A stretch of DNA of 64,000 nt from Octopus bimaculoides (GCF_001194135.2 NC_068981.1:156776935-156840934), one strand, 5' to 3'; shown: positions 4,870 to 48,569, counted from the first letter of the stretch. Notes: generated from the sequence alone by a model not told the origin. Program-made: numbers and translations.

Positions 4870-5501
4870 TTAATGATCTAAGGGTCTTATTTTCATTTCA
4901 GTTGCTTTTAGCTGTTCGTATTTCCAACTGTTCCAGGCTATGCCACGGAATTTGGCATATGATTTACGATGATATAATCCGTTAAGCATGGCCCGCCAAC
5001 AATTTGTAAACCACCATCCGCCGTCCCATTGTGATGCACAATTGACACGCGCGTGTTTATCATTATCTCTGTCCATTGTGCTGAAAAAGGCATAATTGTG
5101 CAAGTAGAAGCTGTTACGTGCAGTTCCGCTGAATGACGATACGTGCAATCTATATTTGTCTCGCTCTCCTTCGATTTTAAAACTTTGATACGTCGCATAG
5201 GCACGGTTTCCGCTGAAATCCCATAAATCAATTCGCAGTTCGTATGCTTTCTGATTGCTGAGAAGAAAAATGTTTTGGTTTCCTAACCAGAACTCGTTAC
5301 TAACATCACCAAAACCAGTTTTATAATCCAACCATTTGCGATTGAAATTTTCAGTGCCATCCGCTCGACGCTGGAATAACAACCACCCACCACCATCAGT
5401 ATCCATATCACACCAGACAGCCAAACTGCAAGTTAGGCCATCTGGTTGTATTTTATAAACTCCTGATGCTTTGTGGCCGGCTTTATAAATAGCTGAGCAA
5501 T
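4870..5501 (-). CDS. Terminal coding exon encoding a complete fibrinogen-related C-terminal domain (FReD)
   Basis: Acceptor TTTCTTTTATTTATTTCAG|AT (plus strand 5502-5520). The open frame reads (D)CSAIYKAGHKASGVYKIQPDG..VWCDMDTDGGGWLLFQRR..GFGD..EFWLGN..FSTMDRDND..NC..GGWWFTNC..LNG..EMKIRP, with a stop at 4870-4872. The exon starts with 2 nt, matching the phase-1 donor at 47828. Confidence 0.95.
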
Positions 5502-6147
5502 CTGAAATAAATAAAAGAAATAATCAAAATTAATCTTTCATGTTTTCATGAGACAATGCTATTGTATAAATATTTCACTTGTGTAACTAACTATTAAGTA
5601 TAGATTGTTTGCTAGATAAATCACTGGGTACAGGACTTCAGATATTTTATGTATAAATACTTATGGAGATCTCCATTTTGCTTATTGTAAGCCATGTGTG
5701 GATTTGATCTCTGCACATCAAGTTAACAAAACAGACAACTCTGTAGTCAATGAAGAAGTCTCAGCTTCAACACTCTATAGACTAGAAATTAGCGGTTAAA
5801 TCTTTCTCAAATCAATCTTTGATATACAAAACAAAACAAAAAAAAAACGAAATTGTCATGGATGGAACACCTTTCATCATAGGTCTACTCGATCAGGGCT
5901 AACCTGTTCTAAACAAAAATGTCTCAACCCATAGGTAGCCTACAAGTGAACCCTTATACAAGCACTCAATTTCCTACAAATAACAGGCAAAATATCGTTC
6001 ATATCCCACTCTACCATCTTGGCAAAAGGAAACAGTGAATAATGTAATCCTACATCCAGTATGTCGTACAAAAAGATGGTGTGTTTACAGTTTGAACACC
6101 TATTATCATAGGTTTTGTCAATCAGAGATAACTTGATGTTAAATAAC

Positions 6148-6493
6148 GGTTTCAAATTTTGGCACACGGGAAACAATTTTGCGGGGTGGGTACGTCTATT
6201 ACATCGACCGTAGCTCTAAACTAGTACCTATTTTATTGACCCGAAAAGATGAAAGGCAAGTCGACTTCGGAAGAATTTGAACTCAGAACGTGAAGCTGTA
6301 AGAAATGCCGCTAAGAAATACCGTTCGGTGGGCTAAGGATTCTGCCAGCTCGCCGCTGGGAAATAGCGTCGAAGTCCACTTTGCCTTTCATCCTTTTAGA
6401 GTCAATAAATAATTACCAGTTGAGCAATTGGGTTGATGTAGTCGACTTATACCTTCTCCCGAGATTGCTGGCCTTGTATCAAAAATTTGAAAC
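6148..6493. mobile_element. Two family A SINE copies, head to head (6148-6355 minus; 6366-6493 plus, 5'-truncated)
   Basis: Both match the 59252 copy. Confidence 0.75.
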
Positions 6494-6569
6494 CAATATT
6501 AATATTATTTTGCCTAAGTTCCATAGAATCTCAAACCCATATCATAAGATCAATAAATTAACACGTTAT

Positions 6570-7490
6570 TTCCCTTGGCTTCTGCACTGGCGTTGCTTGA
6601 AAGGTAGTAAAACTCTTCACAATATATTCAAACTTCCAGTTTCTTTGAGTGAAACATGTGTGTGCAATGTTCCACCAAATTCTGATCAAGGAAACACTCT
6701 TAGGCGAGTAAAAGTCTTCATTATTGACGAAGCTTCAATGACATCAGTTTGTTTTGAAAGCTATAGACAATTGTTTTAGAGATATTATGAATAGTAATAG
6801 AATATTTGGTGGGAAAATTATCGTACTGGGAGGAGATTTTAGATAAGTTCTTCCAGTTGTTCCCAGAGCTCCTCCTGCAGCTGTACTTGATGCCTGCCTC
6901 AAACGGTCTTCTATGTGGGATAATTTTCATCAAATGCAACTTACGCAAAATATGAGAACAAATGCAAATAAGCAAGAATTTTCGAGGTGGCTACTACAAC
7001 TTGGAAGTGGATTTCTTCAAAGCTCTCTTGATAATCTCGCAAAAGATACTATTGATATTCCTGAGGCATGCATATGTAAAAATTCTTCGGTATCTGATAT
7101 ATTTGACAATTGTACAGCAGAAGAAATGAAAAATAGAGATTTTTTATATCCTAAAAATAAGGACTGCTTAGTAGTAAATGAAGAAATTCTAAGTAGACTT
7201 CCCACTGAGACTAAGACATATTTAAGCACTGACTGATAAAGAAGAAGCCCAGAATTATCCCTTGGACTTTATAAACTCTCTTACACCTTATTATGCTTCT
7301 TAGGAACCTCTCTATAACACAAGGTCAATACAACGGAACTCGCATCGAAGCATCAATTATAAGTAGATCTCATTCTCACAGGAGAGAACTGATTCCAAGA
7401 ATCAAACTTATTCCAAGCGATGCAAACATTTCATTCGTTCTGCCTCGGACCCAGTTCCCGGTTCGTCTGTCCTATTCTATGCATTAGAAG
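6570..7490 (+). mobile_element. Helitron PIF1-like helicase remnant
   Basis: TLHNIFKLP, VFIIDEASM, FGGKIIVLGGDFR*VLPVV, LTQNMR, FSRWLLQLGSG, MLLRNL..NGTR and IPRIKLIPSD..QFPVRLSYSM, with frameshifts and stops. Confidence 0.9.
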
Positions 7491-7754
7491 AGTGTATCCT
7501 TCTTTTTAATGAAATGGTATTGAGAAATGGAAGCCAATAAGTTGAGAAGTTTTCTTGAGTTGTGAGTTTAATCTGTTTGGCTCTTATACCGCATAGCTGT
7601 TGTACGAAAGTTTGACCAATGTAATTAAGAATATTATGGTTTGATGGATTAGACGTGAATGGAAAACTTGAGAAAGCTTATAAAAATTAGATTACGAATA
7701 TATTTGCATAGACATGGACTTTTTATGTGTGTGTGTGTGTGTGTGTNNNNNNNN

Positions 7755-8280
7755 NNTGTCTGTGTCTGTGTCTGTGTTTGTCCCCCCACCATCGCTTGAC
7801 AACCGATGATGGTATGTTAACGTCCCTGTAAATTAGAATAAGTACTAAGCTTTCAAAGAAAGAGTCCTGGGGTCGATTTCTTCGACTAAAGGCTGTGCAC
7901 TAGCATGGGAGCAGTCAAATGACTGAAACAAATAAAAGAAAATAATAAAAGAATGTATACAACAGGCTTTCTTTCAGTATCCTTGTATCTATGTTTGTCT
8001 CCACCACCGCTTGACAACCGGTGGTGGTGTGTTTACATCCCAGTAACTTAGCTGTTCGGCAAAAGAAACCGACAAAATATCAGGGTAAAAAAATCCTGGG
8101 GTTGATTCGTTCGACTAAAAATTATATATATATATGTTACCTTTTGTTTCCATCATTAGACTACGACTGTGCTGGGGTACCGCCTTGAAGAATTTTTAGT
8201 CGAACGAATCAACCCCAGGATTTTTTTACCCTGATATTTTGTCGGTTTCTTTTGCCGAACAGCTAAGTTACTGGGATGTA
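7755..8280. mobile_element. Cluster of SINE family B tails (two plus, one minus)
   Basis: Tails at ~7775-7940 (+), 7990-8123 (+) and 8135-8280 (-). Confidence 0.75.
8034..8280. repeat. Perfect 90-bp inverted repeat (8034-8123 / 8191-8280)
   Basis: The arms are identical base for base, with a 67-bp spacer. The right arm ends exactly at the gap. Confidence 0.9.
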
Positions 8281-9044
8281 NNNNNNNNNNNNNNNNNNNN
8301 NNNNNNNNNNNNNNNNNNNNNNNNNNNNNNNNNNNNNNNNNNNNNNNNNNNNNNNNNNNNNNNNNNNNNNNNNNNNNNNNNNNNNNNNNNNNNNNNNNNN
8401 NNNNNNNNNNNNNNNNNNNNNNNNNNNNNNNNNNNNNNNNNNNNNNNNNNNNNNNNNNNNNNNNNNNNNNNNNNNNNNNNNNNNNNNNNNNNNNNNNNNN
8501 NNNNNNNNNNNNNNNNNNNNNNNNNNNNNNNNNNNNNNNNNNNNNNNNNNNNNNNNNNNNNNNNNNNNNNNNNNNNNNNNNNNNNNNNNNNNNNNNNNNN
8601 NNNNNNNNNNNNNNNNNNNNNNNNNNNNNNNNNNNNNNNNNNNNNNNNNNNNNNNNNNNNNNNNNNNNNNNNNNNNNNNNNNNNNNNNNNNNNNNNNNNN
8701 NNNNNNNNNNNNNNNNNNNNNNNNNNNNNNNNNNNNNNNNNNNNNNNNNNNNNNNNNNNNNNNNNNNNNNNNNNNNNNNNNNNNNNNNNNNNNNNNNNNN
8801 NNNNNNNNNNNNNNNNNNNNNNNNNNNNNNNNNNNNNNNNNNNNNNNNNNNNNNNNNNNNNNNNNNNNNNNNNNNNNNNNNNNNNNNNNNNNNNNNNNNN
8901 NNNNNNNNNNNNNNNNNNNNNNNNNNNNNNNNNNNNNNNNNNNNNNNNNNNNNNNNNNNNNNNNNNNNNNTGAGGGTAGGTGGGGTATGTGGGTAGGTAG
9001 AGGTGGATTATGTGGGAGAGGGTGTAGGGGTGGGGTGTAAGGGA

Positions 9045-9080
<36 letters not shown>

Positions 9081-9979
9081 GACGGGCTTCTTTCAGTTTC
9101 CATTTGCCAAATCCACTCACAAGAACTAGGTCATCCCGGGACTATAGCAGAAGACACTTGTTCAAGTTGCCACTTGGGGAGACTGAACCCGAAATCAAGT
9201 GGTTGGAAAGCAAGCTAACTAACATACACTCGCATCTACATAGAAATAATTTTAAGAGTTAACATGAGTTACAGCTTAGATTATATTTCGTAAATTTGAA
9301 TCTATAAGAGCCTCGGCAATCCTGAACACTGATAGCGCTGGTAGTGTTACAGATGATGACAACAATGATGCCGATGATGCCAATGATGAGACAACGTTGA
9401 CATCTACATTCTAGTAACAAATAAATACCAACAAATATGGTATAGTTTTCTCAGATAATGTATATAAAAGTGCCGAGGGAAGCTGGAAAGAATGGCAAAA
9501 GCTGACTTTGCAGGTTAGCGAAGTTATGTAGATGGCAACGGAAATTATTTGAACTCTGTCTGCTGCCTTATCTTGACTTGGCCTGGATTTAATGTCGAGA
9601 CATAAAATAAACTTAAACTAGTTGACATAGCAGAACGTCTGGTTTGGGAATAACGCTTGCAGCCGGTTTGTTACTCACACTCTCACGCTTCCCTCTACTG
9701 TTATTTGCTGTTGTCGTTTTGTTTTGTGTCTGTTTTTTCCTTTTAATTCCTGCTTCCATCATACCAACAAGTTTAACGACGAGAGCATTAGCAGCCACGA
9801 TATGACAGGCGATGAAATGAAAGAGAAAGGTAGAGAAAGACAAGAAACGGAGTATGATAGACAAGGAAAGTGTGGGATGGAAAAGGAGCAATTACAGTGA
9901 AAAAAGGAAGGAAAGGATAGGATATAAGGTCAAAAGAGTAACGAAAAATTAATGGAAGACAGACGCATGCAGATGAGGG

Positions 9980-9980
<1 letters not shown>

Positions 9981-10019
<39 letters not shown>

Positions 10020-10034
10020 TAGATAGATAGACAG

Positions 10035-10109
<75 letters not shown>
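9981..10109. repeat. (AGAC)n(AGAT)n microsatellite
   Basis: Seen directly. Confidence 0.95.
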
Positions 10110-11159
10110 TTGGACGAAGGTAGAAATAAAAGTATAAACTTAATCACAGATACACACAACACACATAAACACATAGACAGCCTGGTGCACATATTCACAA
10201 ACATATGTACATACATGTCCATATGTATATGCATATCTATCTATCTATCTGTCTGTATATATNNNNNNNNNNNNNNNNNNNNNNNNNNNNNNNNNNNNNN
10301 NNNNNNNNNNNNNNNNNNNNNNNNNNNNNNNNNNNNNNNNNNNNNNNNNNNNNNNNNNNNNNNNNNNNNNNNNNNNNNNNNNNNNNNNNNNNNNNNNNNN
10401 NNNNNNNNNNNNNNNNNNNNNNNNNNNNNNNNNNNNNNNNNNNNNNNNNNNNNNNNNNNNNNNNNNNNNNNNNNNNNNNNNNNNNNNNNNNNNNNNNNNN
10501 NNNNNNNNNNNNNNNNNNNNNNNNNNNNNNNNNNNNNNNNNNNNNNNNNNNNNNNNNNNNNNNNNNNNNNNNNNNNNNNNNNNNNNNNNNNNNNNNNNNN
10601 NNNNNNNNNNNNNNNNNNNNNNNNNNNNNNNNNNNNNNNNNNNNNNNNNNNNNNNNNNNNNNNNNNNNNNNNNNNNNNNNNNNNNNNNNNNNNNNNNNNN
10701 NNNNNNNNNNNNNNNNNNNNNNNNNNNNNNNNNNNNNNNNNNNNNNNNNNNNNNNNNNNNNNNNNNNNNNNNNNNNNNNNNNNNNNNNNNNNNNNNNNNN
10801 NNNNNNNNNNNNNNNNNNNNNNNNNNNNNNNNNNNNNNNNNNNNNNNNNNNNNNNNNNNNNNNNNNNNNNNNNNNNNNNNNNNNNNNNNNNNNNNNNNNN
10901 NNNNNNNNNNNNNNNNNNNNNNNNNNNNNNNNNNNNNNNNNNNNNNNNNNNNNNNNNNNNNNNNNNNNNNNNNNNNNNNNNNNNNNNNNNNNNNNNNNNN
11001 NNNNNNNNNNNNNNNNNNNNNNNNNNNNNNNNNNNNNNNNNNNNNNNNNNNNNNNNNNNNNNNNNNNNNNNNNNNNNNNNNNNNNNNNNNNNNNNNNNNN
11101 NNNNNNCACACACACACACACACACACATTCACACACGCACGCACGCAAGCACGCACAT

Positions 11160-11700
11160 ATTTGTGAAAGTTTTTGTGACAAGAAGCTTGCTTGCCAATC
11201 TTTTTGCTAATACCTTGGCTGAAAATTCCTTATTCCTGAGCAGTGTTACTACACCCCTGCTAACAGCACTAGAAATTCTTCCGTTCTGCTGCCAGTTACG
11301 GCAAACGTCTGCCAAAAGGCCGCCAAGCAAATCCGGCATGAACATATAGAATCCATAGGACAGACCACCCAAACTGGGCGTGTTGCGACTTGGGCAATCG
11401 TGCATCGTCTCCCGTATTTCAGGAACAGTTATCGGCTTTTCGCAGAACCTCGCGTTCGCTGCGGCAGGCCGTCTAGATACAAACTAAAATCTGCTACTGT
11501 CGTTGACCCACTGCTCTCCCCACACAGCCGAGCGAAGTACTGTTGGAAAGTTGCACACATCTGCTGGTAATCGTGACCTTGTTGCTGCATCGAGTCTCCA
11601 CTGCTCGGGCCCATCGGATGGTTTTAGTTCCTTCGTGTCAGAGTGCAGAGGTCTTATCTCTGACAACGCAGCCTTCTTGTTTCGTCTCAAAGAAATGGTC
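11160..11700 (-). mobile_element. L1/Tx1-like LINE ORF2 fragment (start of RT)
   Basis: TPSLGGLSYGFY..MPDLLGGLLADV..WQQNGRI..VSRGVVTLLR..AKVLAKRLA follows the SPGxDG..FY to KILAKRL pattern. Confidence 0.7.
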
Positions 11701-14140
11701 AAGGGCCAGAAATGGTCAAGGAAAAGAAATATAATGGGAGTGACAAAAGAAAATATCCATGGTGGAAAAGAAGAATCCAGGCAGGGTTAGATATGCACTA
11801 GAAGGAAATTTCTGTGTTAGACCGAAAAGAGAAAGGAGAGCTTAAAAGCGAACAAAAATACAGGGCACTGAAAAGGAAGTATAATATTAAAAGAAAGGGC
11901 CTGAAAGTGGTAATGGAGGAACTTAAACAGCGCCTCATTGCAAAGAAAGCAAAGATGGTAAGATACCAAAGAATGAAGGGTTACCACTAGAATATGTTAT
12001 TCAGAGTAGATTAGAAGAGATTCTATAAAGAAATAAATGGAGTGTGTACAGATGAAATGTTGATACCAGATAACATCGAAAGTCAAAGGTTTTGGAGTGA
12101 TATCTGGAGCAAAGACAAGGAGCACAAGAAAGATGCTGAATGGTTGCAAGAACTGAAACAAATAGTAGTCTGTCCAAAACTGGCAGAGCTAGTCATTTCA
12201 ATGAGGGAAGTGAAGGAAATCATAAAAAAAAGCAACTGGAAGGCCCCGGGACCAGATGGAGTTCAAGGCTACTGGATCAAAAGATTTGGGGAATGTCATA
12301 CACGAATAGCTATGCAATTTAACACCTTGTTAAATGCTGACCAAGTAACACCAGAGTGATTGACATTGAGTAAGACAGTGCTATGCCTGAAAAACATCGA
12401 AAAAGGCAATACGGTAGACAATTACAGGCCGATATCTTGTTTGCCACTTATGTGGAAGTTATTGACTGGAATACTCGCAGAGTCAATGTACGAACATCTG
12501 GGGAAAAAATGGAGTCCTGCCATATGAGCAGAAGGGTTGCAAGTGTAAGTGCAGAGGTACCAAGGATCAACTCCTGATAGACAAAACTGTACTTAGAGAT
12601 TGCAAGAGGAGGAAAAGTAACTTAGCCATGTCATGGATCGACTATCGTAAGGCGTACGATATGAGCCCACATTTTTGGATTATGGAGTGTATGAACCTAT
12701 TTGGTATTGCATCAAATGTTGAGCGATTGCTTGGAAAAAGTATGGCGAATTAGAGGACGGACTGGATAGCATACGGAAGAAGCTTAGGGACAGTAGGAAT
12801 TACGAGGGGCATCTTCCAAGGGACTGCCTGTCCCCACTGATCTTTGTACTGTGCTTGATACCACTAACATTGATTCTGTGGAAAGCTAAAGCCGGGTATG
12901 TATTCAAAAACCGCCAACAAAAAGTCAACCATTTGTTATTCATGGATGACCTCAAACTTTATGGTAAAGATGAAGCCCAAGTCAGTTCCCTCGTTGATAC
13001 GGTGTATACCTTCAGTGCTGATACCGGAATGGAGTTCGGACTGAGAAAGTGTGGTGTGTTAGTCTTGAAGAGAGGCAAAATCAAATGTATGGACAGGCAA
13101 ACGATACCGTCGGGGGAGGTTATGAAGCATACGGGCTATAAGTACTTGGGGATTTTGGAAATGGATAAATTGATGGAGAAAGAAAAATTTAAGGTGGAGT
13201 ACTTGCGCAGACAGAGACTGAGACGGGGACAGGTTGTTTCAAACGCGACAGAGAGGAGGAAGATGTCTCATTAGTGAAATGTGTGTGAAGTCTGAGAAAG
13301 ATAATCTGGCATGGTATGTAAAAAATTCAAAGGAGAGATTGGTGGCAAGAATAAGAAAGATAAAAGTCCTAAGCAGTGATGAAGCAAACGAAAAGGGAGA
13401 TTTTATACAAGACAGATAGAATGACACCTTGAATAGATGGGGGTAAAATGTATGGTCAATTCTTGCAGGAAATGTCCGAGACAATTGACAAAGATAAGAT
13501 CTAAGAATAGACTAGGAAAAGCGACTTGAAAGTTGAAACTGAGGCCCTAATCTTCGCAGCCCAAGAACAGACACTGAGAATGAACTATATCAAGTTCAAT
13601 ATAGACAAGTGACTTCATCACTTTGTAGGTTGTAGGTGAGAAATGTGAAACAATAAACCACATTATTAGTAAATGTAAGATGCTTGCACAGAAAGAGTAC
13701 AAGAGAAGGCACGACAATATTGCCAGATTGGTTCACTGGAAGCTGCGCCATAAGTATGACATGGGCAGAAGTGAGAAATTGTATGAGTACCAACTGGAAA
13801 GAGTTGCTGAAAACAAACAATATAAGATCAGTGGCTAGAAAATATGACGTTGTAGAAAAGAAGAACAAAGAAATTATTGTGGATATTGTTTCACTGTTGG
13901 ACGACAGGGTGAATGAGAAAGAAAATGAGTAAGTTGGGAAATACCATGAACCAAAGAGGGAAATCAAGAAACTATGGAGAATCGGGTACTTAGAAGTGGT
14001 GCCAATTGTGGTTGGGGCACTGGAAGTAGTTAGTAAAAGGTTGGGTGCATGGCTTGAGAAGCTAAGAATTACCATCAGGACGGCACTGTAGCAGAAACGG
14101 CAAGGATTCTAGGCAGAATGGAAGAATGTTGAAGGAGAAG
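11700..14140 (+). mobile_element. R4/Dong-like non-LTR retrotransposon pseudogene (RT, CCHC zinc knuckle, restriction-like endonuclease)
   Basis: [86 protein letters not shown] and VVPIVVGAL. Many stops and frameshifts. Confidence 0.88.
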
Positions 14141-14477
14141 AAATGAGTCAAAGGATCTTAGGCCATTTGATACGGCTTACCCTTTTGGTATAGTGTCGGT
14201 ATAACATCAGGCAGAGCAATAGCGTGACGGATGACAATGATAATAAGAATAATCTGACGTATAATAAAACACAACGTGTGTTTCGTCTGTTACGCTGGTA
14301 GAAGGAGACTAAAACAACAAACGGAGTAGGAGTGAGTGGTAATCAGAGGTGTTATATGCAAGTGAACTGTAGTAAAAGGTTTTTTTCTCTGAAGTCGCTG
14401 GTATTTTTAATCAAATTAAAACTGCAAATGTTTATTGTAAATTGTATTTGGTTTATCAGTTTCATACACATACACAT

Positions 14478-14610
14478 ATGAGGTGTGATCAATAAGTATC
14501 CAGACTGCTGCCATAGTAACGAAGCTAAAGCACGTTGAGTAAAGCTGCTTGACACAGATTGATCTTGAACTTTGCTGTGCATGTGCACTAAGCTTTAACG
14601 TTCTAGCTCA
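14478..14610 (+). mobile_element. 5' end fragment of a mariner related to the 52217-52782 element
   Basis: TATGAGGTGTGATCAATAAGTATCCAGACTG..GTAACGAAGCTAAAG..AAGCTGCTTGACACAGATTG matches the TIR and subterminal sequence of the 52782 end. Confidence 0.65.
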
Positions 14611-15085
14611 CTGAAAGGCATAGCCGAGGACAGCATTCGAACCCAGAACGTAAAAACGGACGAAATGGTATCTTAAGCTGAAAAATAACTTTAAGTGAAA
14701 TATGACTGCTTTCATACTCAATCCTGTGTCCTTACTTAATTTGCTTGAATAAGTTTTATGTTATTCACACAATTAAATTACGAAATATACTATTGAGTTC
14801 GTTTGACATGAGACTGTTGTAAACGTATTAGATTGCAACTTCAATTCTTACATGAAAGATCAAGGGAAGTTTAGCAGTGTCTAATTAAGACGAATATGCA
14901 TTCACTAAGAACATTATACGGCTACATTTCAGCCTAGGCTGCGCATGGGAATTCAGGTAATCAGTTAATATCTAATATTCATTCACACCCACCCACGCGC
15001 TCGCACACACGCACACACACACATACATACACACATACACACACACACGACATATGATATAATATGATATATGATATATGTGTGT

Positions 15086-15138
<53 letters not shown>

Positions 15139-15210
15139 TGTTTGTGAGTGTGTGTGTGTATGATTTTCATCATGTTGAACCGTTAATCCCTACACATTTT
15201 TCTCTCTCAA

Positions 15211-15655: not shown

Positions 15656-15703
<48 letters not shown>

Positions 15704-15704
15704 T

Positions 15705-15735
<31 letters not shown>

Positions 15736-19460: not shown

Positions 19461-19477
19461 ACACAGGCAAATACATA

Positions 19478-30918: not shown

Positions 30919-30952
<34 letters not shown>

Positions 30953-34068: not shown

Positions 34069-34152
<84 letters not shown>

Positions 34153-40485: not shown

Positions 40486-40705
40486 AAGGCGGCTACCAAG
40501 TTGAATCGCTAGAGCATTGGTGAAATTTCTTGCAGTATTTCTTTCGTATCTTAACGTTCTGATTTCAAATCCCGCCGAGACCAACTTTGTCGTTCATCTT
40601 TTTGTGGTCGATAAAATATAGTCCTACTCAAATACTTGGGTCGAAGATATCGATTAATCCTCTCCCACAATAATGTTGGCCTTGTGTCTAAATAGAAACA
40701 ATTAC
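40486..40705 (+). mobile_element. SINE family A copy (diverged)
   Basis: Head, ACGTTCTGATTTCAAATCCCGCCGAG and tail GGCCTTGTGTCT. Confidence 0.7.
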
Positions 40706-41052
40706 CTAGAGGAAGCCTGTATACGGCATAAAAAAATAACACTTACAAAACTAACCCAAACGTAATACCATATTTATCCTTTCAACCACTGATTTCAAAT
40801 TACACTTATACGATCATATCACACCGCCTCAAAACATACACAGCATCTGCTAACATCACGCTCATAACCTCCCACTATTTTTCAGACACAGCTGGACAGC
40901 AAACCTATCACTACATCAGTCACCGAGAAATATAGTTCTAAAATGATAGACAGTTACGAAATCTACTGCCTTCTTTCATACTACCAACACCAGTGAACAC
41001 CAGATACAACCAGCCATCACATTCAGAAATATAAACAAAACGTGCGCGCACG

Positions 41053-41143
<91 letters not shown>

Positions 41144-42850
41144 AGCAATTATACCAGCAGTTATAACACTTCTGCAACATTAACAGGACACATACCTTTC
41201 ATCAAGATTACACATATAAATTGCTAACATAATGAAATAAACATACAAAATTGTAGAACACCTTCAAATGCGCGAGGCACAGTTTGTTTCCACAGCAAGC
41301 TTTATCCTTCATACTCCAGGCAATCCAAATACTAACACATTATCACTAAACGTCCACTGAAAGAATTTCGCATACTCAGCCCTGAGAAACAAAAACATAT
41401 TCACACAGAAATAGCAACTGTAGCAATGTCCTCATTAGTTCCAAAACACTGCGCTGGGGTACACATCACCAATGTTTGTTACAAAGTAACAGTATTTGTT
41501 TTGTTCTGGCCAAATCCACCTTGTCCGCCTCCGCTGAGAGCACTACCTGAATCTATAGACTAACAGAAATAGACAGGATAGTGGAGAGTGTACAATATAT
41601 AAAGGCTGCAACACTGCATCTTATAGTATAATTCATGGCATATAGGGGAGTACAGTAACGTAGAACTGGAACAAAAGATAAGTGGCCTATTCGTTCGATT
41701 AATAATCTGCCTGTCATTGGTGACTCCCGGCTATATAACAATAACAAATTAAAAAGCTCTACGCAGTCTCTCGACCTGCTAGAAATAGCTGCCGAATTTC
41801 CCTGAAAGGATGGACAAATTGGACAATAAAGTGATAGGAATATAAAAACATTAGATTGACATTGCTTAAAGTCATTTGATTGTACTCTTGCTCAATTGGG
41901 ACAGATCTGGAGGTTTAGAAACGACAACGATATATCAAATGCAAGTTCTAAAATCAAAAGACATCAAACGAGATACAGCAAAACGCCAACTGGTGTTGCT
42001 TTTGCTTTATTGTCGTCGTCGTCGTCGTCGTTGTTGTTGTTGTTGTCGTCGTCGTCGGTGGTGGTGAGGTACTGGTACTGGTGCTGGTCGAGTGTCTTTC
42101 TTTTATAAGACAGTAACACATGATATGAAGGAATTCGTCCGCTATTCCTAACAAATTAAGCAAGCTTACATTTTTTTTTTTTTGTATTGTAATCAGTGAA
42201 AATCAGGCGAGCACAGAATCACAGGAAATAAGGTAACCGAAATTGGTATCCGTGAACTAAGTTTTTACTCTTGCTTTTAGCCATTAACGTCACAACTGTA
42301 ATTTCTAATTCTATTAAAATCTTATCCAAATGTTTATTTATTGAAGCCAACGACGAACTATTCTGGAAACTCAATGATATTTATATCTAGAAACCAGTGT
42401 TTTGTTGCTGTTTAGGTCCATGTTAGCTCTAAGTAGAGCTACAGTCAAACGTATACCAACCATAGCTATCCTGTCTTTTCTTTTCATAGGGTATAACTAA
42501 GATTACAATGTCCAATGTAGCATGTTTTTTAAGATGGTTGGGTGTGATTTGAGGGAACATTTTGTCTACTATTCCCATCAGATTTATCAATCGAGTTAAA
42601 GAAATGATGGAATGGAAAGAGTGTTAAATAGGAATGGAAATCCTTTTAGAACCAGGAGCGAATTACAAGTGTATAAGAACTGGATGCAGCGAACGAATCT
42701 TCTAATTTACAAATTCCAAGCTATGCAACATACAGGGCCTACAAAATTGTTTTTATCCATTCAATGACTTTTGCATCTATTACGTCTAATTAAATATGAT
42801 TTTCCCTTCTTTGCAGGTATATGTATGAATTTGATATCAATTGCAATGAG

Positions 42851-43285
42851 GAAGGCGGTGGGCTGACAGAATTGTTAGCACGCCGGGCAAAATGTTTAGC
42901 GGCATTTCGTCCGTCCTTACGTTCTGAGTTCAAATTGTACCAAGGTCGACTTTGCTTTTCATCTTTTCGAAGTCAATAGAATAAGTACCAGTTCAACACT
43001 AAGGTCGGTGTAATCGACTTACCCCTTCCCCAAATTATTGGCTTTATGCCAAAATGTGAGACCAATGTTAATTTAAATGAAGGCAGCGAGCAAGCAGAAC
43101 CGTTAGCACGCCAGAAAAAATGCTTAGTGGCATTTATTCTGTCTTTGCGTTCTGAGTCCAAATTCCATCGAAATCGACTTTACCTTTTACCCTTCCGAGG
43201 TCGATAAAATAAGTAACAGTTGAACACTGGAGTCAATGTAATCGACTTACCCTCTCCCTCGAAATTGCTGGCCTTGTGCAAAAAG
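42851..43285 (+). mobile_element. Tandem pair of family A SINEs
   Basis: Two complete copies at 42851-43062 and 43079-43285 in the same orientation. Confidence 0.8.
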
Positions 43286-43539
43286 TTGACACCACTATTA
43301 ATTGAATTCAATAAAATACAGCAATGAAAACTTGTAGAAATAAAGATATTGCTGAATCGGCACACAAACAAGTCATCAGTTGCTATCAATATGGGAAGTT
43401 TAATCGAGAAATTGCTCAAATTTTCTGTATTAATAATGAAAGTGTTATCCAAATTCAATAGATGAATTGAAGAAGGGTATTACTAAGTGAAGAAGGGATC
43501 TAGGAGGCCACAAATAGTTGAAGAAGGAGTGTTAAGAGG

Positions 43540-44280
43540 GAAGTTATAAAACATCGACTTGCAACTGTTCGCGAGGTTGAAAATTCTATGGATGAGTAGC
43601 AATATTGTATATGAACAGAATTGAAAGGCCTTGGATATGAACGAAGAGTGGCGAGAATGATTTCAAAAGCTACTTAAACTAAAAGGCGCAACTTGGCTAA
43701 AGTGTTCTACAGTAAGGAGAACGAGTTTTTGTCGCCAATAATATGATCTGACCAAAGCAAATCCCGCCAAATTTTCCATTTTAAGGCAAATAGATGTATG
43801 TCATAACAAAACTGAAATATGAGAACGAGATTGTTTATAAGGAAAAGTTAAACATAGAGGATTTAGAGTTATGGTACGAGGGGAAACAATGACTAGAGCT
43901 CGTATTTGTTTTTAAATGCTGCTAAATACTTGGAAAGAACACGTTACTCATCTAATCCAGTGTAGGAATTGATAAGAAAACCAATCTCTTTTCAATGAGA
44001 TTAAGCTTCCATGCTATGCAAGCAAGGCATCACAAACCTAGAAAAGAATTTACGAATAGGAGCTTTGAGCAATCCCTGAAGTGGATTACTCAAAGCCCCG
44101 ATCTTAATCCAATAGAATACTTATGGAAACATCTTTATAGAAGGATGCAAGCAATATTGTCGAAAAATACTTCAACAGAGCTGAAAAAGATATTGACTGA
44201 AGATTGGAGAAACGTGGTTTAGTATGTTACTAATAATATAATTAAACCCATGCCTAATCGAGTGCAAGCCGTGATATTAG
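43540..44280 (+). mobile_element. Tc1-like transposase remnant
   Basis: LKWITQSPDLNPIEYLWKHL..STELKKILTEDW..KPMPNRVQAV. Confidence 0.8.
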
Positions 44281-45359
44281 TACCAACTTCCATTTATTTT
44301 GGATAACTTTTCATGAAGATGTTTAACGTTAGATTAACGTTGCATTTTATTACAGGCCATTGTATATGAAATTACTTGGATCAAAAGACTTAAATCGTTT
44401 TTATGAGATTTTAGAGATTTATCAGGAGTCAGTTTCGAATTTGAAGGCGGGCGAAATTTTGTCAGCATGCAAGGCGCTCTCAACCTTTTATAGGCACTTT
44501 GTGTCAAGCTTGGTATTCCAATACTCTCGGTTCAAATTTTCTCTCCTACCTAGTCCGGATGTTTACTTTTTGCCTTTCCTGTGACGATAAAGTTCCAGTT
44601 TTCCTTTTTGTTGTTGTTTGGCTACAGGCCAGATGTGATAGAACAGATCTGTGATTAAAGACATTCGAGTCATGACCAACACTCGTGATTAAATACATTC
44701 GAGTCGTGACCAACACTCTTTATTCTGGTATCTAGAATGATGAGGATGATTTACTTGCTATTTCTAGCACGTCGGTCAACATCTTAGAAGCTCCCTCGTT
44801 GACTCATGTAAGTGTATTTACTCCACATATGTCCACTTATACATTCTACTGTTTATATATTATGAAAAACAATGTAATTGTTTATATCTTGCTAAAAACA
44901 ATGTATCACTGACAGAAATAATCTAGTTTCTGTGTGAAGTTGGGAAACTTCTAGATGAGTAGGAGTGGTATATCAGAATGTAAATGAATACCAAATATGA
45001 AAGCTGAGTAAAAGAAAATAATAGATTCTGTTTACTTTTACAAAAGCAAGTGACCTAAAATATATACAACAGCAGTCTTAAGCAACTGTACTCAAGTAAT
45101 AGTAAATAGGTACAGGGACTGAATTTAAAATTATAAGGACCCCTATTTCTTTATAAGGACATCAAACCAAATTGTTCTGCAGGTGAGAAGTGAGATTCGC
45201 CTCTTTTTCTGGAGAAGAGGAGATGTAAGGGAAGTGATTTGACTTCGTTGGGTACGTTCCTTCTCGTTAGGAGACATTCGTCCAACAATTAGACATAAAA
45301 AGTAAGAACAACGTAATTCCCCTGTCTAATACCGATGACAAAATCCTTTCTAAAAAGAT

Positions 45360-45590
45360 CATCTGCGTAGTCGCCTGGCTTGGTAGAAACAGCAGCCAAA
45401 CCCCGCTCAAATCGCAACTTATCGTCTTAAATGAAAACATACATTTGATAATGCAGTCCTAGATATCTCTAAAATGACAAGCTGAAAAGGTTTTGATCAC
45501 AGGAATGGCCTTTTCAAACTGGAATGGTCTGAAATAAATGGCCTATTCAGTCAAATCGGACTTGGAGATTAACAACAACAACAACGACAA
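45360..45590 (-). mobile_element. Repeat family E copy (AAC-ended interspersed repeat)
   Basis: Shared motifs CTAGAAACAGCAGCCAA..TCAAATC, TGTCTTAAA, TGATCA(T/C)AGG and AACAACAAC. Related copies at ~34660-34860 (-), 42400-42590 (+), 44610-44802 (+) and 46725-46915 (-). Confidence 0.6.
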
Positions 45591-47827
45591 TACTTAATTA
45601 CTGCACTAGTATTGTCTGAAAATTACACTATTGTCGCTGCTCGACTAACAAAATTCCTACTCAGTAAATTAGCATTTACATGACTGAGTATTCCACGAGC
45701 ATTTATACGCTTAATGCAATTCTCTGATTGAATCAGAGTGACTCAATATAACAAGACTAAACCTTTGAATTACAGGTATAATCCAGAGAGAAAGAAAAAA
45801 GATTTCATATTCCTTCCTCCCTCACTACTGGATAGTACTTAATTTGTAGACCTCCGAAAAAAATGAAAGAAAATCTGATCACCTAGAAGTTGACCTCAGA
45901 ACGTAGAGAGCCGGAACGAATAACACTTGGCTTTCTGTCTGTTATGTAAGACTCCCAGAAAAACTTTTAATAGATTTATTAAGGTAAATTACATTGGTCT
46001 CAAAGCAAAAGAATTCGCGTCGTAGAGTTTATGGACAGTTCTGTGCTTGTTTACAGGTAATACCTTACTTCATGGCCGCCTACAAGCTCCCTTTCTCCCT
46101 CTGGATCTCCGTGTGTAACCATGAGATTTACCCGAGAGTTTAATATTCATTAGATAACATTAATAACGCATAGTTCAAATTTAACAAGTGGTACAATATT
46201 AAACTATAAATAATAAAGAACGATTTTATGGTACAAATCGGTAACTTAATGCTGTTATCACACTATCCGATGCTCGAACGTCTCTATCGAGTCGCCGGTT
46301 CACACTTTTGGTTGGTAATGTTGTTTTAAATACACCTAAAATAGCATGATGGTTACGATTAGAACGCCTCTGATCATAGGTCATCTCGCTCGGGCTGACC
46401 TGCAGCTTAACAACAACTATTTAAAAGGAAGACAACAAAAGGCATCTGACTGAAACCGAATTAGTCAGAACTCCCTGTCATGTGACTGCTGTGTTAGTAA
46501 ATTTGAAGGAAGCTTCTTCAAATACACGTGTACTAGTAGACTATAATAGAATGAAGATATGGGATGTTGTGTTATTCTTGTATCTCCTACTGGATGTTAA
46601 TGACAGAATAAGTAATTCAATTCTAAACTGAAACCGTATCGTACTGATTCAAATGCTGAAAATTATCTGCAATGATTCTCTGCTTATTGCTTTAACTAGA
46701 TTAACCACAAATCAATGAAAGAATTCCGGCGTAGTTGCTCGGCGTTCTAGAAACAGCAGCCAAGTCTACCTCATATCGAAACCTACTGTCTTAAAGAAAG
46801 GATACATTGAACAGTATAGTGCCTTGTGTACATAAAAGACGGGGGGATGGTAACGGTTACAACGTCTTTAATCATAGGTATGTTTGGTGAGAGTTGACCG
46901 GGGTTAAACAACAAGCCCCCATCCCAACCAACTAGTTTATATAGGTACGTAATCTAAATAATATAGGAACTGGACTGCAGAATCGATGGAGCACCAAACA
47001 AAGTAGCTTGTATCATTTGGTTATTTCTTTTATGTTCTGTGTTCAAATCTTACCCGAGTCCACTTTACCTTTCAAGCATATAAACTCAATAAAATTTTGA
47101 TAAGTACTGTGTTGATACAACTGATTATACCGTAGAAGACGGTGCCCAAGTATGGCCACAGTCTAATGGCTGAAAGCAGTAAAGACAAAAACGAAAACAA
47201 AAATGAAAAGAAATATTGTAACGTTCGAGAAAAAGATGAGCAACTGAAGTAGTTTCAGCTAGGATCAGGACCGGAACAGTATCACGGACTCGACAACCTT
47301 CAATCTCGGAATAGTAATTTATTTCCTCTAAGCACAATGGTTTCTTTTTTGTAAGAATTTCGTGTATAATTGATTTATCTTCGACTCCAGAAAATTACTG
47401 GTACTGTCGACTTCAAATGCATGAAAGACAGTCTACCAAGGTGAAAACTGAACGCTGAAATGTGAGACACCAATTATGATGTCATAAAATACCTACTCAA
47501 GTGTTTATCGTTTGTGCCAGATCAATGTTTCAAACGAAAAATGAATGTATCGATAAACCTTTGAAATGGCCTTACACATTTCAGTGTTTAAAGTGACTAA
47601 AGTTAACGACTTTGAATTTATAAACGCTATACAATACGGGCAGTATACTATATTATTATTGTATTATAAATAGATTCCATTAAAGCTTCGTTGATATAAT
47701 ATAGCCTAGATTAGTTATATAGTAACAATACAACACTACTAATACAAGTTATGGAAACATTATCAATACATAAAGTTTGGATCACAAAACAAAGAAAGAT
47801 CAGTAAAAGTATTATACAAATTCTTAC

Positions 47828-48569
47828 CTGAATACGAGTGCTGTGCAGTTTCCACTAAGCTACATGGAGTTGCATATTTTGAAAGTATCTTTTTGCCAGA
47901 ACCATCCGTTAAATGAGAAATTGGTTTGGAAGGTCGTATTTGGAAATTCTTACTCACTTCATCCATATCAAGAACCACAGAAGAAAGTTTGTGATGCAGA
48001 TTATTGTTAATACGTTCCTGACGAAATACTTTCGTTTCCATGGAATGTAATGCTCTAATCAACTGGGTGAGATTAGTTTTTAAAGTGTTCAAACCAGTAT
48101 CGATGTGATCTATTTCCATATCATGTCCCTTTACATTACTTTCGTATAAATTTGCTCGTTCACGCTCCACTTTTTGCATTTCTTGAAGATATTGCAAGCG
48201 CTGGGTCAAGAACGCCAAACGTCTTCTGCAAACACCGCTGCTTTTGTCATTTGTCGTAGATGTCTCTGATGACGTAGCTTCAACATCGAAGAAATAATCC
48301 CCACTCTCCGGATTTATTCCTGGTTCGTTAAAAACTTCATCTTCATCATCTGTCCGTTTATCGGCAAAAGATTTGTTTACATTTGTTTTGTTACTGGGTG
48401 TCAAAATTGGACAAAGGGGTGCGCTGCGACGGTTCACAACGATGGTGTATGAACAGGACTCTGTTCTAATAGTTGTTTGTTTTGTGTAATTTTTAGCTTT
48501 TACTAAGCAGAGGCAGAAAACAAGAAGTGTGATTTGTAATTTCTGGTGAAATATATCTCCAAAAGTCAT
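47828..48569 (-). CDS. First coding exon of an angiopoietin-related (ANGPTL-like) secreted protein: signal peptide, CSYT motif, acidic linker, coiled coil
   Basis: ATG at 48569, with an in-frame TGA upstream at 48602-48600. MTFGDIFHQKLQITLLVFCLCLVKA is signal-peptide-like. ESCSYTIVV resembles the angiopoietin/ANGPTL N-terminal CxYTF motif. Heptad-rich segment LAFLTQRLQYLQEMQ...LHHKLSSV. The exon ends at the donor CAG|GTAAG (plus strand cttacctg, 47823-47830) in phase 1. Confidence 0.88.

What the first reader, a model, noticed from the sequence alone, without database searches (positions are those of the whole stretch)
4870..48569. Angiopoietin-like gene assembled from two exons 42.3 kb apart
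Seen: the donor after ..QHSYS-G (47828) and the acceptor before AT-TGC (5501) are both phase 1. Splicing yields ..YS-D-CSAIY.., restoring the conserved Asp-Cys start of the FReD. The joined CDS is 742+632 = 1374 nt, or 457 aa. Established: signal peptide + CxYT motif + coiled coil + FReD is the architecture of angiopoietins and ANGPTL1/2/6. Inference: this is an invertebrate angiopoietin-type ligand rather than a FREP, ficolin or tenascin fragment. That would be notable if the host is a cephalopod, which has a closed circulation. The whole FReD sits in one exon, whereas vertebrate angiopoietins split it.
Basis: partly seen in the sequence, partly recalled or inferred. Interest (0 to 1): 0.7.

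Follow-up and report, generated by a model that had tools for sequence, protein, structure and literature searches.

The report
Octopus coiled-coil fibrinogen-domain gene, two exons
The two distant exons do form one real octopus gene for a secreted stalk-plus-fibrinogen-head protein, but it is already annotated, belongs to a mollusc-wide family, and only faintly resembles angiopoietin.

Summary
Exon 1 (47828-48569, minus strand) and exon 2 (4870-5501) join across a 42,326-nt phase-1 GT-AG intron into a 457-aa protein. It is 100% identical to RefSeq XP_014773316.1, "fibrinogen-like protein 1", of Octopus bimaculoides. The four N gaps lie inside the intron. Gap-free orthologous loci in Argonauta and cuttlefish have the same two exons. 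Cuttlefish mRNA contigs splice exon 1 directly to exon 2 at the homologous codon.

The protein has a signal peptide, a Cys-x-Tyr-Thr motif, about 95 helical residues with heptad periodicity, and a whole fibrinogen-related domain (FReD) in one exon. It belongs to a strongly supported mollusc-wide clade. It is the faster-evolving, cephalopod-specific duplicate of a conserved gene 137 kb away.

Its N-terminal motif resembles that of angiopoietin-1/2 in a profile-profile comparison (91% probability, below the usual threshold). Against angiopoietin membership:
- It lacks the ANG-1 coiled-coil domain.
- It lacks the angiopoietin Cys-x-Cys-x-Cys.
- It lacks part of the Tie2-contact loop.
- Its FReD joins angiopoietins first in only 7 of 150 bootstrap trees.

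The gene structure matches vertebrate FGL2. Function is untested. This is an ordinary annotated gene with a modest evolutionary lead.

The parts
47828..48569 (-). Coding exon 1 (742 nt, Met1 to Ser247 plus the first base of the Asp248 codon)
   Evidence: It is 100% identical to XP_014773316.1 residues 1-247. It is conserved with Argonauta.
48495..48569 (-). Predicted signal peptide, residues 1-25 (MTFGDIFHQKLQITLLVFCLCLVKA|KN)
   Evidence: Read from the sequence. AlphaFold2 gives a helix at 3-25. The cleavage site is inferred; no signal-peptide program was run.
48408..48455 (-). N-terminal Cys motif C39-S-Y-T-I-V-V-N-R-R-S-A-P-L-C53-P54
   Evidence: C39, Y41, C53 and P54 are invariant in the mollusc N-terminal alignment. 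The region aligns to the ANGPT1/2 motif C-x-Y-T-F-x-L-P-E-x-D-x-C by hhalign, probability 91%.
48234..48407 (-). Acidic, Ser/Thr-rich linker, residues 55-112, longer in the cephalopod-specific copy
   Evidence: pLDDT is below 50 and no secondary structure is predicted. It appears as an insertion relative to other molluscs in alignment A1. It holds NxS/T sites at 60 and 65.
47949..48233 (-). Long helix or coiled coil, residues 113-207, with Cys114 at its start
   Evidence: AlphaFold2 predicts one helix at 113-207, in a low-confidence model. Heptad score for residues ~140-212 is 0.88, against 0.40 +/- 0.09 in 200 shuffles, none reaching it.
5502..47827 (-). Single intron, phase 1, GT-AG, 42,326 nt as assembled (1,842 of them N)
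   Evidence: It holds decayed PIF1/Helitron-like and reverse-transcriptase fragments. No block conserved with Argonauta other than a dispersed repeat.
4870..5501 (-). Coding exon 2 (632 nt): the rest of the Asp248 codon, the whole FReD to His457, and the TAA stop at 4870-4872
   Evidence: Pfam Fibrinogen_C scores 245 bits, E 9e-73, over residues 246-454.
4825..4830 (-). AATAAA, candidate polyadenylation signal 40 nt after the stop
   Evidence: Read. The 3' flank is conserved with Argonauta down to 4697. Use as a poly(A) site is not shown.
48855..49027 (-). Upstream block conserved with Argonauta (candidate promoter or 5'UTR)
   Evidence: blastn gives 76% identity over 191 nt. A second block lies at 50727-50792.

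Best explanation
This is a real, already annotated two-exon gene of Octopus bimaculoides. It encodes a secreted glycoprotein of 457 residues. The parts, in order, are a signal peptide, a two-cysteine CxYT motif, an acidic disordered linker, a heptad-repeat helix of about 95 residues, and one complete Ca2+-site-bearing FReD.

It belongs to a family found across molluscs. The family is defined by this N-terminal region and by a phase-1 intron placed exactly before the Asp-Cys of the FReD. Within that family it is the cephalopod-specific, faster-evolving duplicate of an ancestral gene that lies 137 kb away.

Inferred mechanism:
- The helices assemble chains into a coiled-coil oligomer.
- The oligomer is stabilised by N-terminal and stalk cysteines. 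The mature chain has nine Cys, so at least one is unpaired within a chain.
- The oligomer presents several FReD heads that bind a target multivalently.
- The target is more likely an endogenous cell-surface or matrix partner, as for ANGPTL and FGL2, than an acetylated sugar as for ficolin. The His next to the second P-domain Cys is replaced by Trp, and the family is low-copy with conserved synteny.

It is not a member of the angiopoietin family proper. It may share an ancient N-terminal clustering motif with that family.
For: Shown:
- Gene model and identity to XP_014773316.1.
- Orthologues in O. sinensis/vulgaris, Argonauta and cuttlefish with the same intron. A spliced cuttlefish mRNA joins the two exons.
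- Pfam finds a FReD and no other domain.
- Helix and heptad periodicity.
- The mollusc clade has 99-100% bootstrap support. The cephalopod subclade has 100% and is sister to a pan-mollusc subclade that holds the O. bimaculoides paralogue.
- The N-terminal profile hits only molluscs among named proteins.
- The identical phase-1 G|AY split of the Asp codon occurs in Octopus, its paralogue, Argonauta and Pecten.
- The paralogue and the Pecten member are both nested antisense in a thioredoxin/PDI-like gene.
- Rates differ: 77% and 50% identity for this copy, against 87% and 79% for the paralogue over comparable splits.
- The DxDND Ca2+ motif is kept, Trp416 replaces the His that follows the second P-domain Cys in the ficolin, FIBCD1, tenascin, FGL1, MFAP4 and FGG sequences aligned, and C-x-C-x-C is absent.

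Inferred: oligomerisation, the disulfide roles, and the kind of target.
Against: - No expression, localisation or binding data exist for this protein or, as far as my searches went, for any member of the family.
- The AlphaFold2 model is of low confidence (mean pLDDT 53), so structure-based inference is weak.
- Many invertebrate FReD proteins are immune lectins. The faster evolution of this copy would fit an immune role.
- The role of the pocket His is taken from my knowledge of the ficolin, TL5A and FIBCD1 structures, not from a test here.
- The trees are neighbour-joining on 208 columns. Deep nodes are unresolved.
Confidence: 0.75

Rival explanations
1. It is a true invertebrate angiopoietin. 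On this reading it is a vascular ligand that clusters a Tie-like receptor tyrosine kinase on cephalopod vessel or muscle cells. It would be homologous to ANGPT1/2/4 over the N-terminal superclustering motif, the coiled coil and the FReD.
For: - hhalign of the mollusc N-terminal profile against real ANGPT1/2 N-termini gives probability 91%, P 1e-6, over 76 colinear columns centred on C-x-Y-T-[FILV]-x-[VL]-[NP]-E-x-D..C. Reversed controls stay at or below 4%.
- The overall architecture is the same.
- Lys-Phe at the position of Ang2 Lys468-Phe469 is kept. Phe469 is named as a Tie2 contact in PMC8294587.
- A squid single-cell atlas reports a transcript annotated 'angiopoietin-1 receptor' in nkx2-5-positive muscle-like cells (PMC9839350).
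Against: - PF25443 ANG-1 is absent.
- C-x-C-x-C is absent.
- About eight residues that include the position of Ang2 Ser480 are deleted. Ser480 is named as a Tie2 contact in PMC8294587.
- The FReD meets ANGPT1/2 first in 7 of 150 bootstrap trees.
- HMMER with the N-terminal profile finds no vertebrate protein.
- The family exists in bivalves and gastropods, which have open circulation.
- The window gene is the derived duplicate, not the conserved copy.
- The squid 'angiopoietin-1 receptor' label is an automatic name that I did not verify.
Confidence: 0.07
2. It is a soluble pattern-recognition lectin or opsonin of the haemolymph, like ficolins, tachylectin-5 and many mollusc FReD proteins. The coiled coil would only provide multivalency for binding microbial glycans.
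For: - FReD proteins with coiled coils in molluscs have been shown to bind microbial patterns, for example CfFREP of Chlamys farreri (PMC11741071).
- The Ca2+ motif DxDND is intact.
- This copy evolves about twice as fast as its paralogue.
- Automatic names include techylectin-5B.
Against: - CfFREP has a different architecture and is not a member of this family.
- The His next to the second P-domain Cys is present in the ficolin, FIBCD1, tenascin, FGL1, MFAP4 and FGG sequences aligned here. It is Trp here, and Gly in the cuttlefish orthologue.
- The family is low-copy. The N-terminal profile gives only 63 hits among 1.84 billion representatives. The ancestral copy keeps its nested position from scallop to octopus. 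Diversified immune FREP arrays look different.
Confidence: 0.3
3. It is the mollusc counterpart of vertebrate FGL2 (fibroleukin). On this reading it is a secreted or membrane-anchored coiled-coil FReD protein with immunoregulatory or procoagulant-like roles.
For: - Human FGL2 gives the highest phmmer score of all vertebrate references, 198 bits against 186 or less. The sequence was recalled, and it is 81% identical to database Jaculus fibroleukin.
- Fish fgl2a has the same two-exon structure, with the whole FReD in exon 2 and a phase-1 intron six codons from the mollusc position.
- Human FGL2 has two exons (PMC11141035).
- Both share a one-residue-longer loop between DND and the Cys.
- NCBI names the Mya arenaria member 'FGL2-like'.
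Against: - hhalign of the N-terminal profiles gives only 30% probability.
- The FReD meets FGL2 first in about 10 of 150 bootstrap trees.
- The boundary intron in phase 1 also occurs in ANGPTL1, so it may be ancestral to many FReD genes.
- FGL2 lacks the CxYT motif.
Confidence: 0.15

Closest known systems
Mollusc coiled-coil FReD proteins. Examples: O. bimaculoides 'techylectin-5B' (P0011), Biomphalaria 'sFReDn13' XP_055890492, Pecten maximus 'fibrinogen-like protein 1' (P0024), Mya arenaria 'FGL2-like' (P0022)
   Same: - The same N-terminal region: C-x-Y-T-x-V-V-N-E-x-D-x-S-x-C-P, then a coiled coil with L-D-V-V-E-V-N-N, then Cys236.
- The same FReD peculiarities: an extra Cys before V-W-C-D-M-D, Trp after the second P-domain Cys, and a short C-terminal loop.
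- The same two-exon structure with the phase-1 split of the Asp codon.
- One clade at 99-100% bootstrap.
   Different: - The window gene and its cephalopod orthologues form a separate, faster-evolving subclade.
- They have N-R-R in place of N-E-x-D, an acidic insert of about 50 residues, and an additional Cys114.
- They share only 38-39% identity with the other members.
Vertebrate FGL2 / fibroleukin
   Same: - Signal or anchor sequence, Cys-rich N-terminus, coiled coil and FReD.
- Two exons with the whole FReD in the second.
- A phase-1 boundary intron.
- A longer DND-Cys loop.
- The best vertebrate phmmer score.
   Different: - No CxYT motif.
- N-terminal profile similarity is not significant.
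- FGL2 has a longer C-terminal loop and Leu after the second Cys.
- No phylogenetic support for grouping.
Angiopoietins ANGPT1/2/4
   Same: - The order of parts.
- An N-terminal C-x-Y-T-hydrophobic...E-x-D..C motif at the same distance from the signal peptide, hhalign probability 91%.
- The Ca2+ motif.
- Lys-Phe-x-Gly-Ile-x-Trp in the P domain.
   Different: - No ANG-1 domain (PF25443).
- No C-x-C-x-C.
- The Tie2-contact loop is shortened.
- The coiled coil is about 95 residues, against about 200 in angiopoietins.
- The FReD sits in one exon.
- No phylogenetic affinity.
Angiopoietin-like proteins ANGPTL1/2/6
   Same: - CxYT-type motif, coiled coil and FReD.
- hhalign probability 84% over 63 coiled-coil columns.
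- A phase-1 intron four codons from the mollusc position in ANGPTL1.
- A nested-gene habit: ANGPTL1 lies antisense in a RasGEF/PH gene.
   Different: - The FReD of ANGPTL1 is split over three exons.
- ANGPTL1/2 have a Pro-rich linker before the FReD.
- Ala-His follows the second Cys.
- No tree support.
- The host gene of the nest differs.

Membership tests
Fibrinogen-related domain superfamily (Pfam PF00147) | Match to the Fibrinogen_C model above the gathering score | tested here: met
   245.1 bits against a cut-off of 22. Residues 246-454 cover model positions 2-220 of 221.
Mollusc coiled-coil FReD family (unnamed; includes Biomphalaria sFReDn13) | N-terminal region with C-x-Y-T...C-P, a coiled coil and Cys236, recognised by a family profile | tested here: met
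   A profile of 11 N-termini scores the window protein at 257 bits, E 4.5e-71. All named hits are molluscs.
Mollusc coiled-coil FReD family (unnamed; includes Biomphalaria sFReDn13) | FReD groups within the clade | tested here: met
   99% (200 replicates) and 150 of 150 bootstrap support for the clade.
Mollusc coiled-coil FReD family (unnamed; includes Biomphalaria sFReDn13) | Two coding exons, with a phase-1 intron splitting the Asp codon of Asp-Cys | tested here: met
   Exact junctions were mapped in the window gene, its paralogue, Argonauta and Pecten.
Angiopoietin (ANGPT1/2/4) | ANG-1-like coiled-coil domain (Pfam PF25443) | tested here: not met
   ANGPT1 and ANGPT2 score 118 and 120 bits. 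The octopus protein and two mollusc relatives (P0011, P0005) give no match at E<=10.
Angiopoietin (ANGPT1/2/4) | N-terminal superclustering motif C-x-Y-T-F-x-L-P-E-x-D-x-C | tested here: inconclusive
   hhalign probability 91%, P 1e-6; controls at or below 4%. This is below the usual 95% threshold, and the motif is short.
Angiopoietin (ANGPT1/2/4) | C-x-C-x-C after the Ca2+ motif of the P domain | tested here: not met
   ANGPT1 has DNDN-CMCKCA and ANGPT2 has DNDK-CICKCS. The octopus protein has DNDKHARVNCA, with one Cys.
Angiopoietin (ANGPT1/2/4) | Tie2-contact residues of the P domain | tested here: not met
   The position of Phe469 is kept. The loop holding Ser480 is deleted. Both are named as contacts in PMC8294587. 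The full list of 13 contact residues was not available to me.
Angiopoietin (ANGPT1/2/4) | FReD groups with ANGPT1/2 in a phylogeny | tested here: not met
   ANGPT1/2 are the first vertebrate group met in 7 of 150 bootstrap NJ trees. Deep nodes are below 50%.
Angiopoietin (ANGPT1/2/4) | Binds and clusters a Tie receptor | not testable with these tools
   Needs recombinant protein and a candidate receptor.
ANGPTL1/2/6 | N-terminal and coiled-coil homology with ANGPTL1/2 | tested here: inconclusive
   hhalign probability 84%, P 8e-6, over 63 columns of coiled coil. The ANGPT versus ANGPTL reference comparison gives 96.6%.
ANGPTL1/2/6 | FReD groups with the ANGPTL1/2/6 clade | tested here: not met
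   ANGPTL1/2/6 form a 100% clade that excludes the mollusc sequences.
FGL2 / fibroleukin | Two-exon gene with the whole FReD in exon 2 | tested here: met
   Fish fgl2a has exons covering residues 1-200 and 201-435, with a phase-1 intron six codons before Asp-Cys. Human FGL2 has two exons (PMC11141035).
FGL2 / fibroleukin | N-terminal homology and FReD grouping with FGL2 | tested here: not met
   hhalign probability 30%. FGL2 is met first in about 10 of 150 trees.
FREP, ficolin, tenascin | IgSF domains (FREP), collagen repeats (ficolin), or EGF and FN3 repeats (tenascin) upstream of the FReD | tested here: not met
   Pfam finds no such domain at E<=1. Nothing of the kind is encoded in the window near the exons.
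Acetyl-group-binding FReD lectins (ficolins, tachylectin-5A, FIBCD1) | His directly after the second P-domain Cys, as part of the acetyl pocket (from my knowledge of the published structures) | tested here: not met
   Trp416 occupies that position in the octopus protein. It is Trp in most molluscs and Gly in cuttlefish. It is His in FCN1, FCN2, FIBCD1, MFAP4, TNR, FGL1 and FGG.

The most novel reading that the evidence does not exclude
The mollusc family could be the protostome counterpart of the ANGPT plus ANGPTL1/2/6 lineage. The CxYT superclustering motif joined to a coiled coil and a FReD would then predate the split of protostomes and deuterostomes. On the same reading, cephalopods duplicated this gene, and the divergent copy in this window was recruited as a ligand in their closed vascular system, possibly through a Tie-like receptor kinase.
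Probability: 0.1. Interest if true: 0.7.

Novelty: new member of a known kind. Interest (0 to 1): 0.3.

Why it matters
As a gene model it adds nothing. RefSeq already holds the exact protein.

The modest value lies in three points that I did not find described in the papers I searched:
- Molluscs share a small, low-copy family of coiled-coil FReD proteins. Its N-terminal domain is otherwise undetected, and its exon structure is fixed.
- The N-terminal Cys motif of that family is the only part with a measurable, sub-threshold resemblance to the angiopoietin superclustering region. This makes the origin of angiopoietin-type architecture testable outside deuterostomes.
- Cephalopods carry an extra, rapidly diverging copy next to the ancestral gene. 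That copy is a reasonable candidate to look up in cephalopod vascular, haemocyte and developmental expression atlases.

Tried and rejected
- **AlphaFold2.** The model from a 17-sequence alignment had mean pLDDT 53. I therefore ran no fold search and used only the helix boundaries.
- **PDB sequence search.** It gave a flat ranking of FReD families at 180-188 bits. It cannot assign the domain.
- **HMMER N-terminal profile.** Searching 1.84 billion representatives found no vertebrate relative. Two of the 63 hits, of 2668 and 511 residues with several matched stretches each, I took to be generic coiled coils.
- **Cluster look-ups.** The weaker N-terminal hits with a C-x-Y-S variant returned no names. 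Their taxa remain unknown.
- **CfFREP of Chlamys farreri (PMC11741071).** I checked it as a possible characterised member. Its FReD sits at residues 104-322 between two coiled coils, so it is a different protein.
- **Biomphalaria FReD catalogue (PMC7588048).** It shows that automatic 'angiopoietin-like' names are scattered over many unrelated snail FREPs. Such names carry no weight.
- **Literature on a Tie receptor in molluscs.** The searches returned nothing usable apart from one automatic label in a squid atlas.
- **Recalled human reference sequences.** Their phmmer scores against the octopus protein reproduce those of the PDB chains for most references to within about 1.5 bits (ANGPT1 was 6.6 bits lower). 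The full-length ANGPT1/2 and ANGPTL1/2 are 93-99% identical to database orthologues. Profile comparisons used database sequences only for the ANGPT and ANGPTL sets; the FGL2 profile included the recalled human FGL2.
- **A hidden exon in the gaps.** Rejected on the comparative evidence.

Full report
**1. The observation**

On the minus strand, an ORF starts at the ATG at 48569 and runs to 47828, where ..TCA G is followed by GTAAGAAT. A second ORF follows TATTTATTTCAG at 5501 and ends at a TAA at 4870-4872.

A script confirmed the arithmetic: 742 + 632 = 1374 nt, one open frame, 457 residues. An exhaustive search for GT..AG pairs that reproduce the protein gave a single solution. The donor follows 47828 and the acceptor sits at 5501. 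The intron is phase 1 and 42,326 nt long.

The split codon G|AT encodes Asp248, which precedes Cys249. tblastn of either half against the whole window found no second copy.

**2. The gene is real and already annotated**

- The joined protein is 100% identical over 100% of its length to XP_014773316.1, 'fibrinogen-like protein 1 [Octopus bimaculoides]'.
- The window is identical to GCA_001194135.2 chromosome CM046601.1. The annotated gene range of 43,700 bp equals window 4870-48569.
- Orthologues exist in O. sinensis and O. vulgaris (95% identity), Argonauta hians (77%) and the cuttlefish Acanthosepion pharaonis (51%).

**3. The assembly gaps**

All four listed gaps lie inside the intron, three of the four flanked by simple repeats. 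They make the intron length an estimate and leave the coding sequence untouched.

Could a gap hide an exon? Comparison argues against it:
- The Argonauta and cuttlefish loci have no N. Each holds the same two coding exons, with introns of 22,600 nt and about 36,400 nt.
- The cuttlefish orthologue is indexed in 57 blocks of the collection, all on contigs of 2-5 kb; the four shown carry the complete uninterrupted CDS.
- One of these contigs aligns to the cuttlefish genome in two blocks. Its junction ..TATGAAG|ATTGTGG.. matches the genomic ..TATGAAG|GTAAGA...TTTCAG|ATTGTGG... That is a spliced mRNA at the homologous codon and phase.
- Between the octopus and Argonauta loci, blastn finds only exon 1 with two upstream blocks, exon 2 with its 3' flank, and a dispersed 92-bp repeat.
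- Protein alignments show no residue missing at the junction.

I found no spliced contig from an Octopus species. The two Octopus-like Logan ORFs are single-exon reads: an exon-1 ORF with intron read-through (P0004) and an exon-2-internal ORF (P0123).

**4. Anatomy of the product**

- Residues 1-25 form a hydrophobic signal sequence.
- Cys39-x-Tyr-Thr...Cys53-Pro54 is invariant in the family.
- Residues 55-112 are acidic, Ser/Thr-rich and predicted disordered.
- Residues 113-207 are predicted as one helix (low-confidence model).
- Residues ~140-212 show heptad periodicity well above shuffles: 0.88 against 0.40 +/- 0.09, with 0 of 200 shuffles reaching it.
- Pfam finds only Fibrinogen_C, at 245 bits over residues 246-454.
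- The mature chain has nine cysteines, so at least one cannot pair within the chain.

**5. Family**

Full-length homologues with 93-98% coverage occur in gastropods, bivalves and cephalopods.

A profile of the N-terminal region was searched with HMMER against 1.84 billion representatives. It gave only 63 hits:
- Many are ORFs of roughly 200-260 residues, and a good number of these end in ..Tyr/Phe-x-Gly-Lys/Arg. That is the read-through expected of the same phase-1 donor.
- Every named hit is a mollusc.
- The Biomphalaria member is catalogued as 'sFReDn13'.

A bootstrap neighbour-joining tree of 208 FReD columns and 56 sequences gave these results:
- The mollusc clade has 99-100% support.
- A cephalopod subclade containing the window gene has 100% support.
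- It is sister to a pan-mollusc subclade, also at 100%, that contains the O. bimaculoides paralogue 'techylectin-5B'.

The paralogue has these properties:
- It lies about 137 kb away on the opposite strand and has the same two-exon, phase-1 structure.
- It is nested antisense in a thioredoxin/PDI-like gene. The Pecten maximus member is nested in the same way.
- It is also more conserved. Octopus-Argonauta identity is 87% and identity to the third sequence in its clade, an unnamed Logan protein I take to be a cephalopod, is 79%. The window gene gives 77% and 50%.

I conclude that the window gene is a cephalopod-specific, faster-evolving duplicate.

**6. Is it an angiopoietin?**

Evidence in favour of a link:

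| N-terminal profile comparison | hhalign probability | Detail |
|---|---|---|
| Mollusc (56 sequences) vs ANGPT1/2 (30 database sequences) | 91% | P 1e-6, 76 colinear columns centred on the Cys motif, same distance from the N-terminus |
| Mollusc vs ANGPTL1/2 (82 sequences) | 84% | coiled-coil segment |
| Mollusc vs FGL2 | 30% | |
| Reversed-profile controls | 4% or less | |
| ANGPT vs ANGPTL (reference) | 96.6% | |

Evidence against membership:
- PF25443 (ANG-1 domain) matches ANGPT1/2 at 118-120 bits but nothing in the octopus protein, the two mollusc relatives scanned (P0011, P0005) or ANGPTL1/2.
- The angiopoietin C-x-C-x-C is absent.
- The C-terminal loop carrying Ang2 Ser480 is deleted. 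PMC8294587 names Ser480 as a Tie2 contact.
- PDB chains of tenascin-R, ANGPT1, ANGPT2, ficolin-1, TL5A, FIBCD1 and FGL1 all score 180-188 bits.
- Going rootwards in bootstrap trees, the mollusc clade first meets ANGPT1/2 in 7 of 150 replicates. It meets the ficolin/FIBCD1/MFAP4/tenascin group in about 74, and FGL2 in about 10.

The FReD is therefore unassigned among vertebrate families. Only the short N-terminal motif points to angiopoietins.

**7. Gene structure compared**

| Gene | Boundary intron | FReD exons | Source |
|---|---|---|---|
| Mollusc genes examined (Octopus, paralogue, Argonauta, Pecten) | phase 1, exactly before Asp-Cys | one | |
| Fish fgl2a | phase 1, six codons upstream | one (two-exon gene) | |
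| Human FGL2 | not mapped here | two-exon gene | PMC11141035, |
| Mammalian ANGPTL1 | phase 1, four codons upstream | three | |

Human FGL2 also gives the best vertebrate phmmer score, 198 bits. It shares the one-residue-longer DND-Cys loop.

For ANGPT1/2 I rely on my own knowledge. The one-exon FReD is a point of likeness to FGL2, not a novelty.

**8. Likely mechanism**

Shown: the protein is secreted-type, has a heptad helix, has an unpaired cysteine, keeps the Ca2+ motif and has a complete FReD.

Inferred: chains form a disulfide-stabilised coiled-coil oligomer that presents several FReD heads for multivalent binding.

Two observations make me lean towards an endogenous protein or cell-surface target rather than acetylated glycans. 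First, Trp replaces the His that follows the second P-domain Cys. The role of that His comes from my knowledge of the ficolin, TL5A and FIBCD1 structures. Second, the family is low-copy and syntenic. The lean is weak, and the lectin reading keeps about 0.3.

**9. Literature**

- I found no study of this family.
- A survey of ANGPTL evolution did not analyse protostome hits (PMC5237311).
- The Biomphalaria FReD catalogue shows that automatic 'angiopoietin-like' names are spread over unrelated FREPs (PMC7588048).
- A squid cell atlas mentions a transcript annotated 'angiopoietin-1 receptor' in nkx2-5-positive muscle-like cells (PMC9839350). This is a lead for the receptor question only.

**10. 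Verdict**

The gene is ordinary and already annotated. The claim 'angiopoietin-type ligand' fails most membership tests, apart from a suggestive N-terminal motif.

Noticed in passing
Outside the window: CM046601.1 156,962,947-156,996,270 (locus L007), about 137 kb from the window gene: A paralogue lies here ('techylectin-5B', 426 aa). It has the same two-exon, phase-1 structure and a 32-kb intron. It is nested antisense inside a thioredoxin/PDI-like gene. The Pecten maximus family member (L010, 73-kb intron) is nested in the same kind of host gene. This points to nested synteny conserved from bivalves to cephalopods.
   Followed up: partly
window 50587-50658 (-), next to the gap at 50822-51657: This stretch is 79% identical over 24 residues to part of an alternative 511-aa O. 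vulgaris model (CAI9716285). That model replaces the signal peptide. It would enter exon 1 at an internal ..CTGCTTAG|TA acceptor at codon 23. It is either an alternative 5' exon or an annotation artefact. The cuttlefish mRNA has its 5'UTR contiguous with exon 1.
   Followed up: partly
window 48855-49027 and 50727-50792: Two non-coding blocks upstream of exon 1 are conserved with Argonauta at 76-81% identity. They are adjacent in Argonauta but 1.7 kb apart in O. bimaculoides. They are candidate promoter or 5'UTR elements separated by an insertion.
   Followed up: no
window 21394-21490, 9078-9173, 55857-55947, 3940-4030: A dispersed repeat of about 92 bp, present in several copies and orientations. 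It is also found four times in the Argonauta intron at 75-92% identity. It looks SINE-like and was not classified.
   Followed up: no
window 6381-7236 (+), 12042-13274 (+), 24363-25151 (-), 26186-26677 (-): Decayed transposon ORFs inside the intron. They comprise PIF1-helicase (Helitron-like) fragments, two reverse-transcriptase fragments (RVT_1 at 105 bits for 24363-25151), and an adjacent ORF with no Pfam match that looks like a LINE endonuclease.
   Followed up: partly
window 58031-58453 (-), 62381-62749 (+), 3252-4063 (+): Transposase-like ORFs flank the gene. One has a weak Tc3-type HTH match, so they may be Tc1/mariner-type remnants.
   Followed up: no
L005 2001-2102 (Acanthosepion pharaonis locus): The deposited cuttlefish model CAE1236812 begins with a 34-residue exon 8.6 kb upstream. 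The mRNA contigs instead start translation at 10587 and run contiguously with the genome for 1.85 kb upstream. That first exon is probably mis-annotated.
   Followed up: partly
Representative hits P0159, P0160, P0162, P0165, P0184, P0187, P0189: These N-terminal-only ORFs carry a C-x-Y-S-[FIL]-[VI]-V-N-E variant of the motif. They sit on unnamed ENA or Logan contigs, some close to 1 Mb. Their taxa are unknown, so the family may extend beyond the molluscs that carry names.
   Followed up: partly
L009 and L011 (fish fgl2a and mammalian ANGPTL1 loci): Both vertebrate relatives are also nested antisense inside larger genes. The host is a CFAP58-type coiled-coil gene for fgl2a and a RasGEF/PH gene for ANGPTL1. 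Nesting is thus recurrent for coiled-coil FReD genes, although the hosts differ.
   Followed up: no
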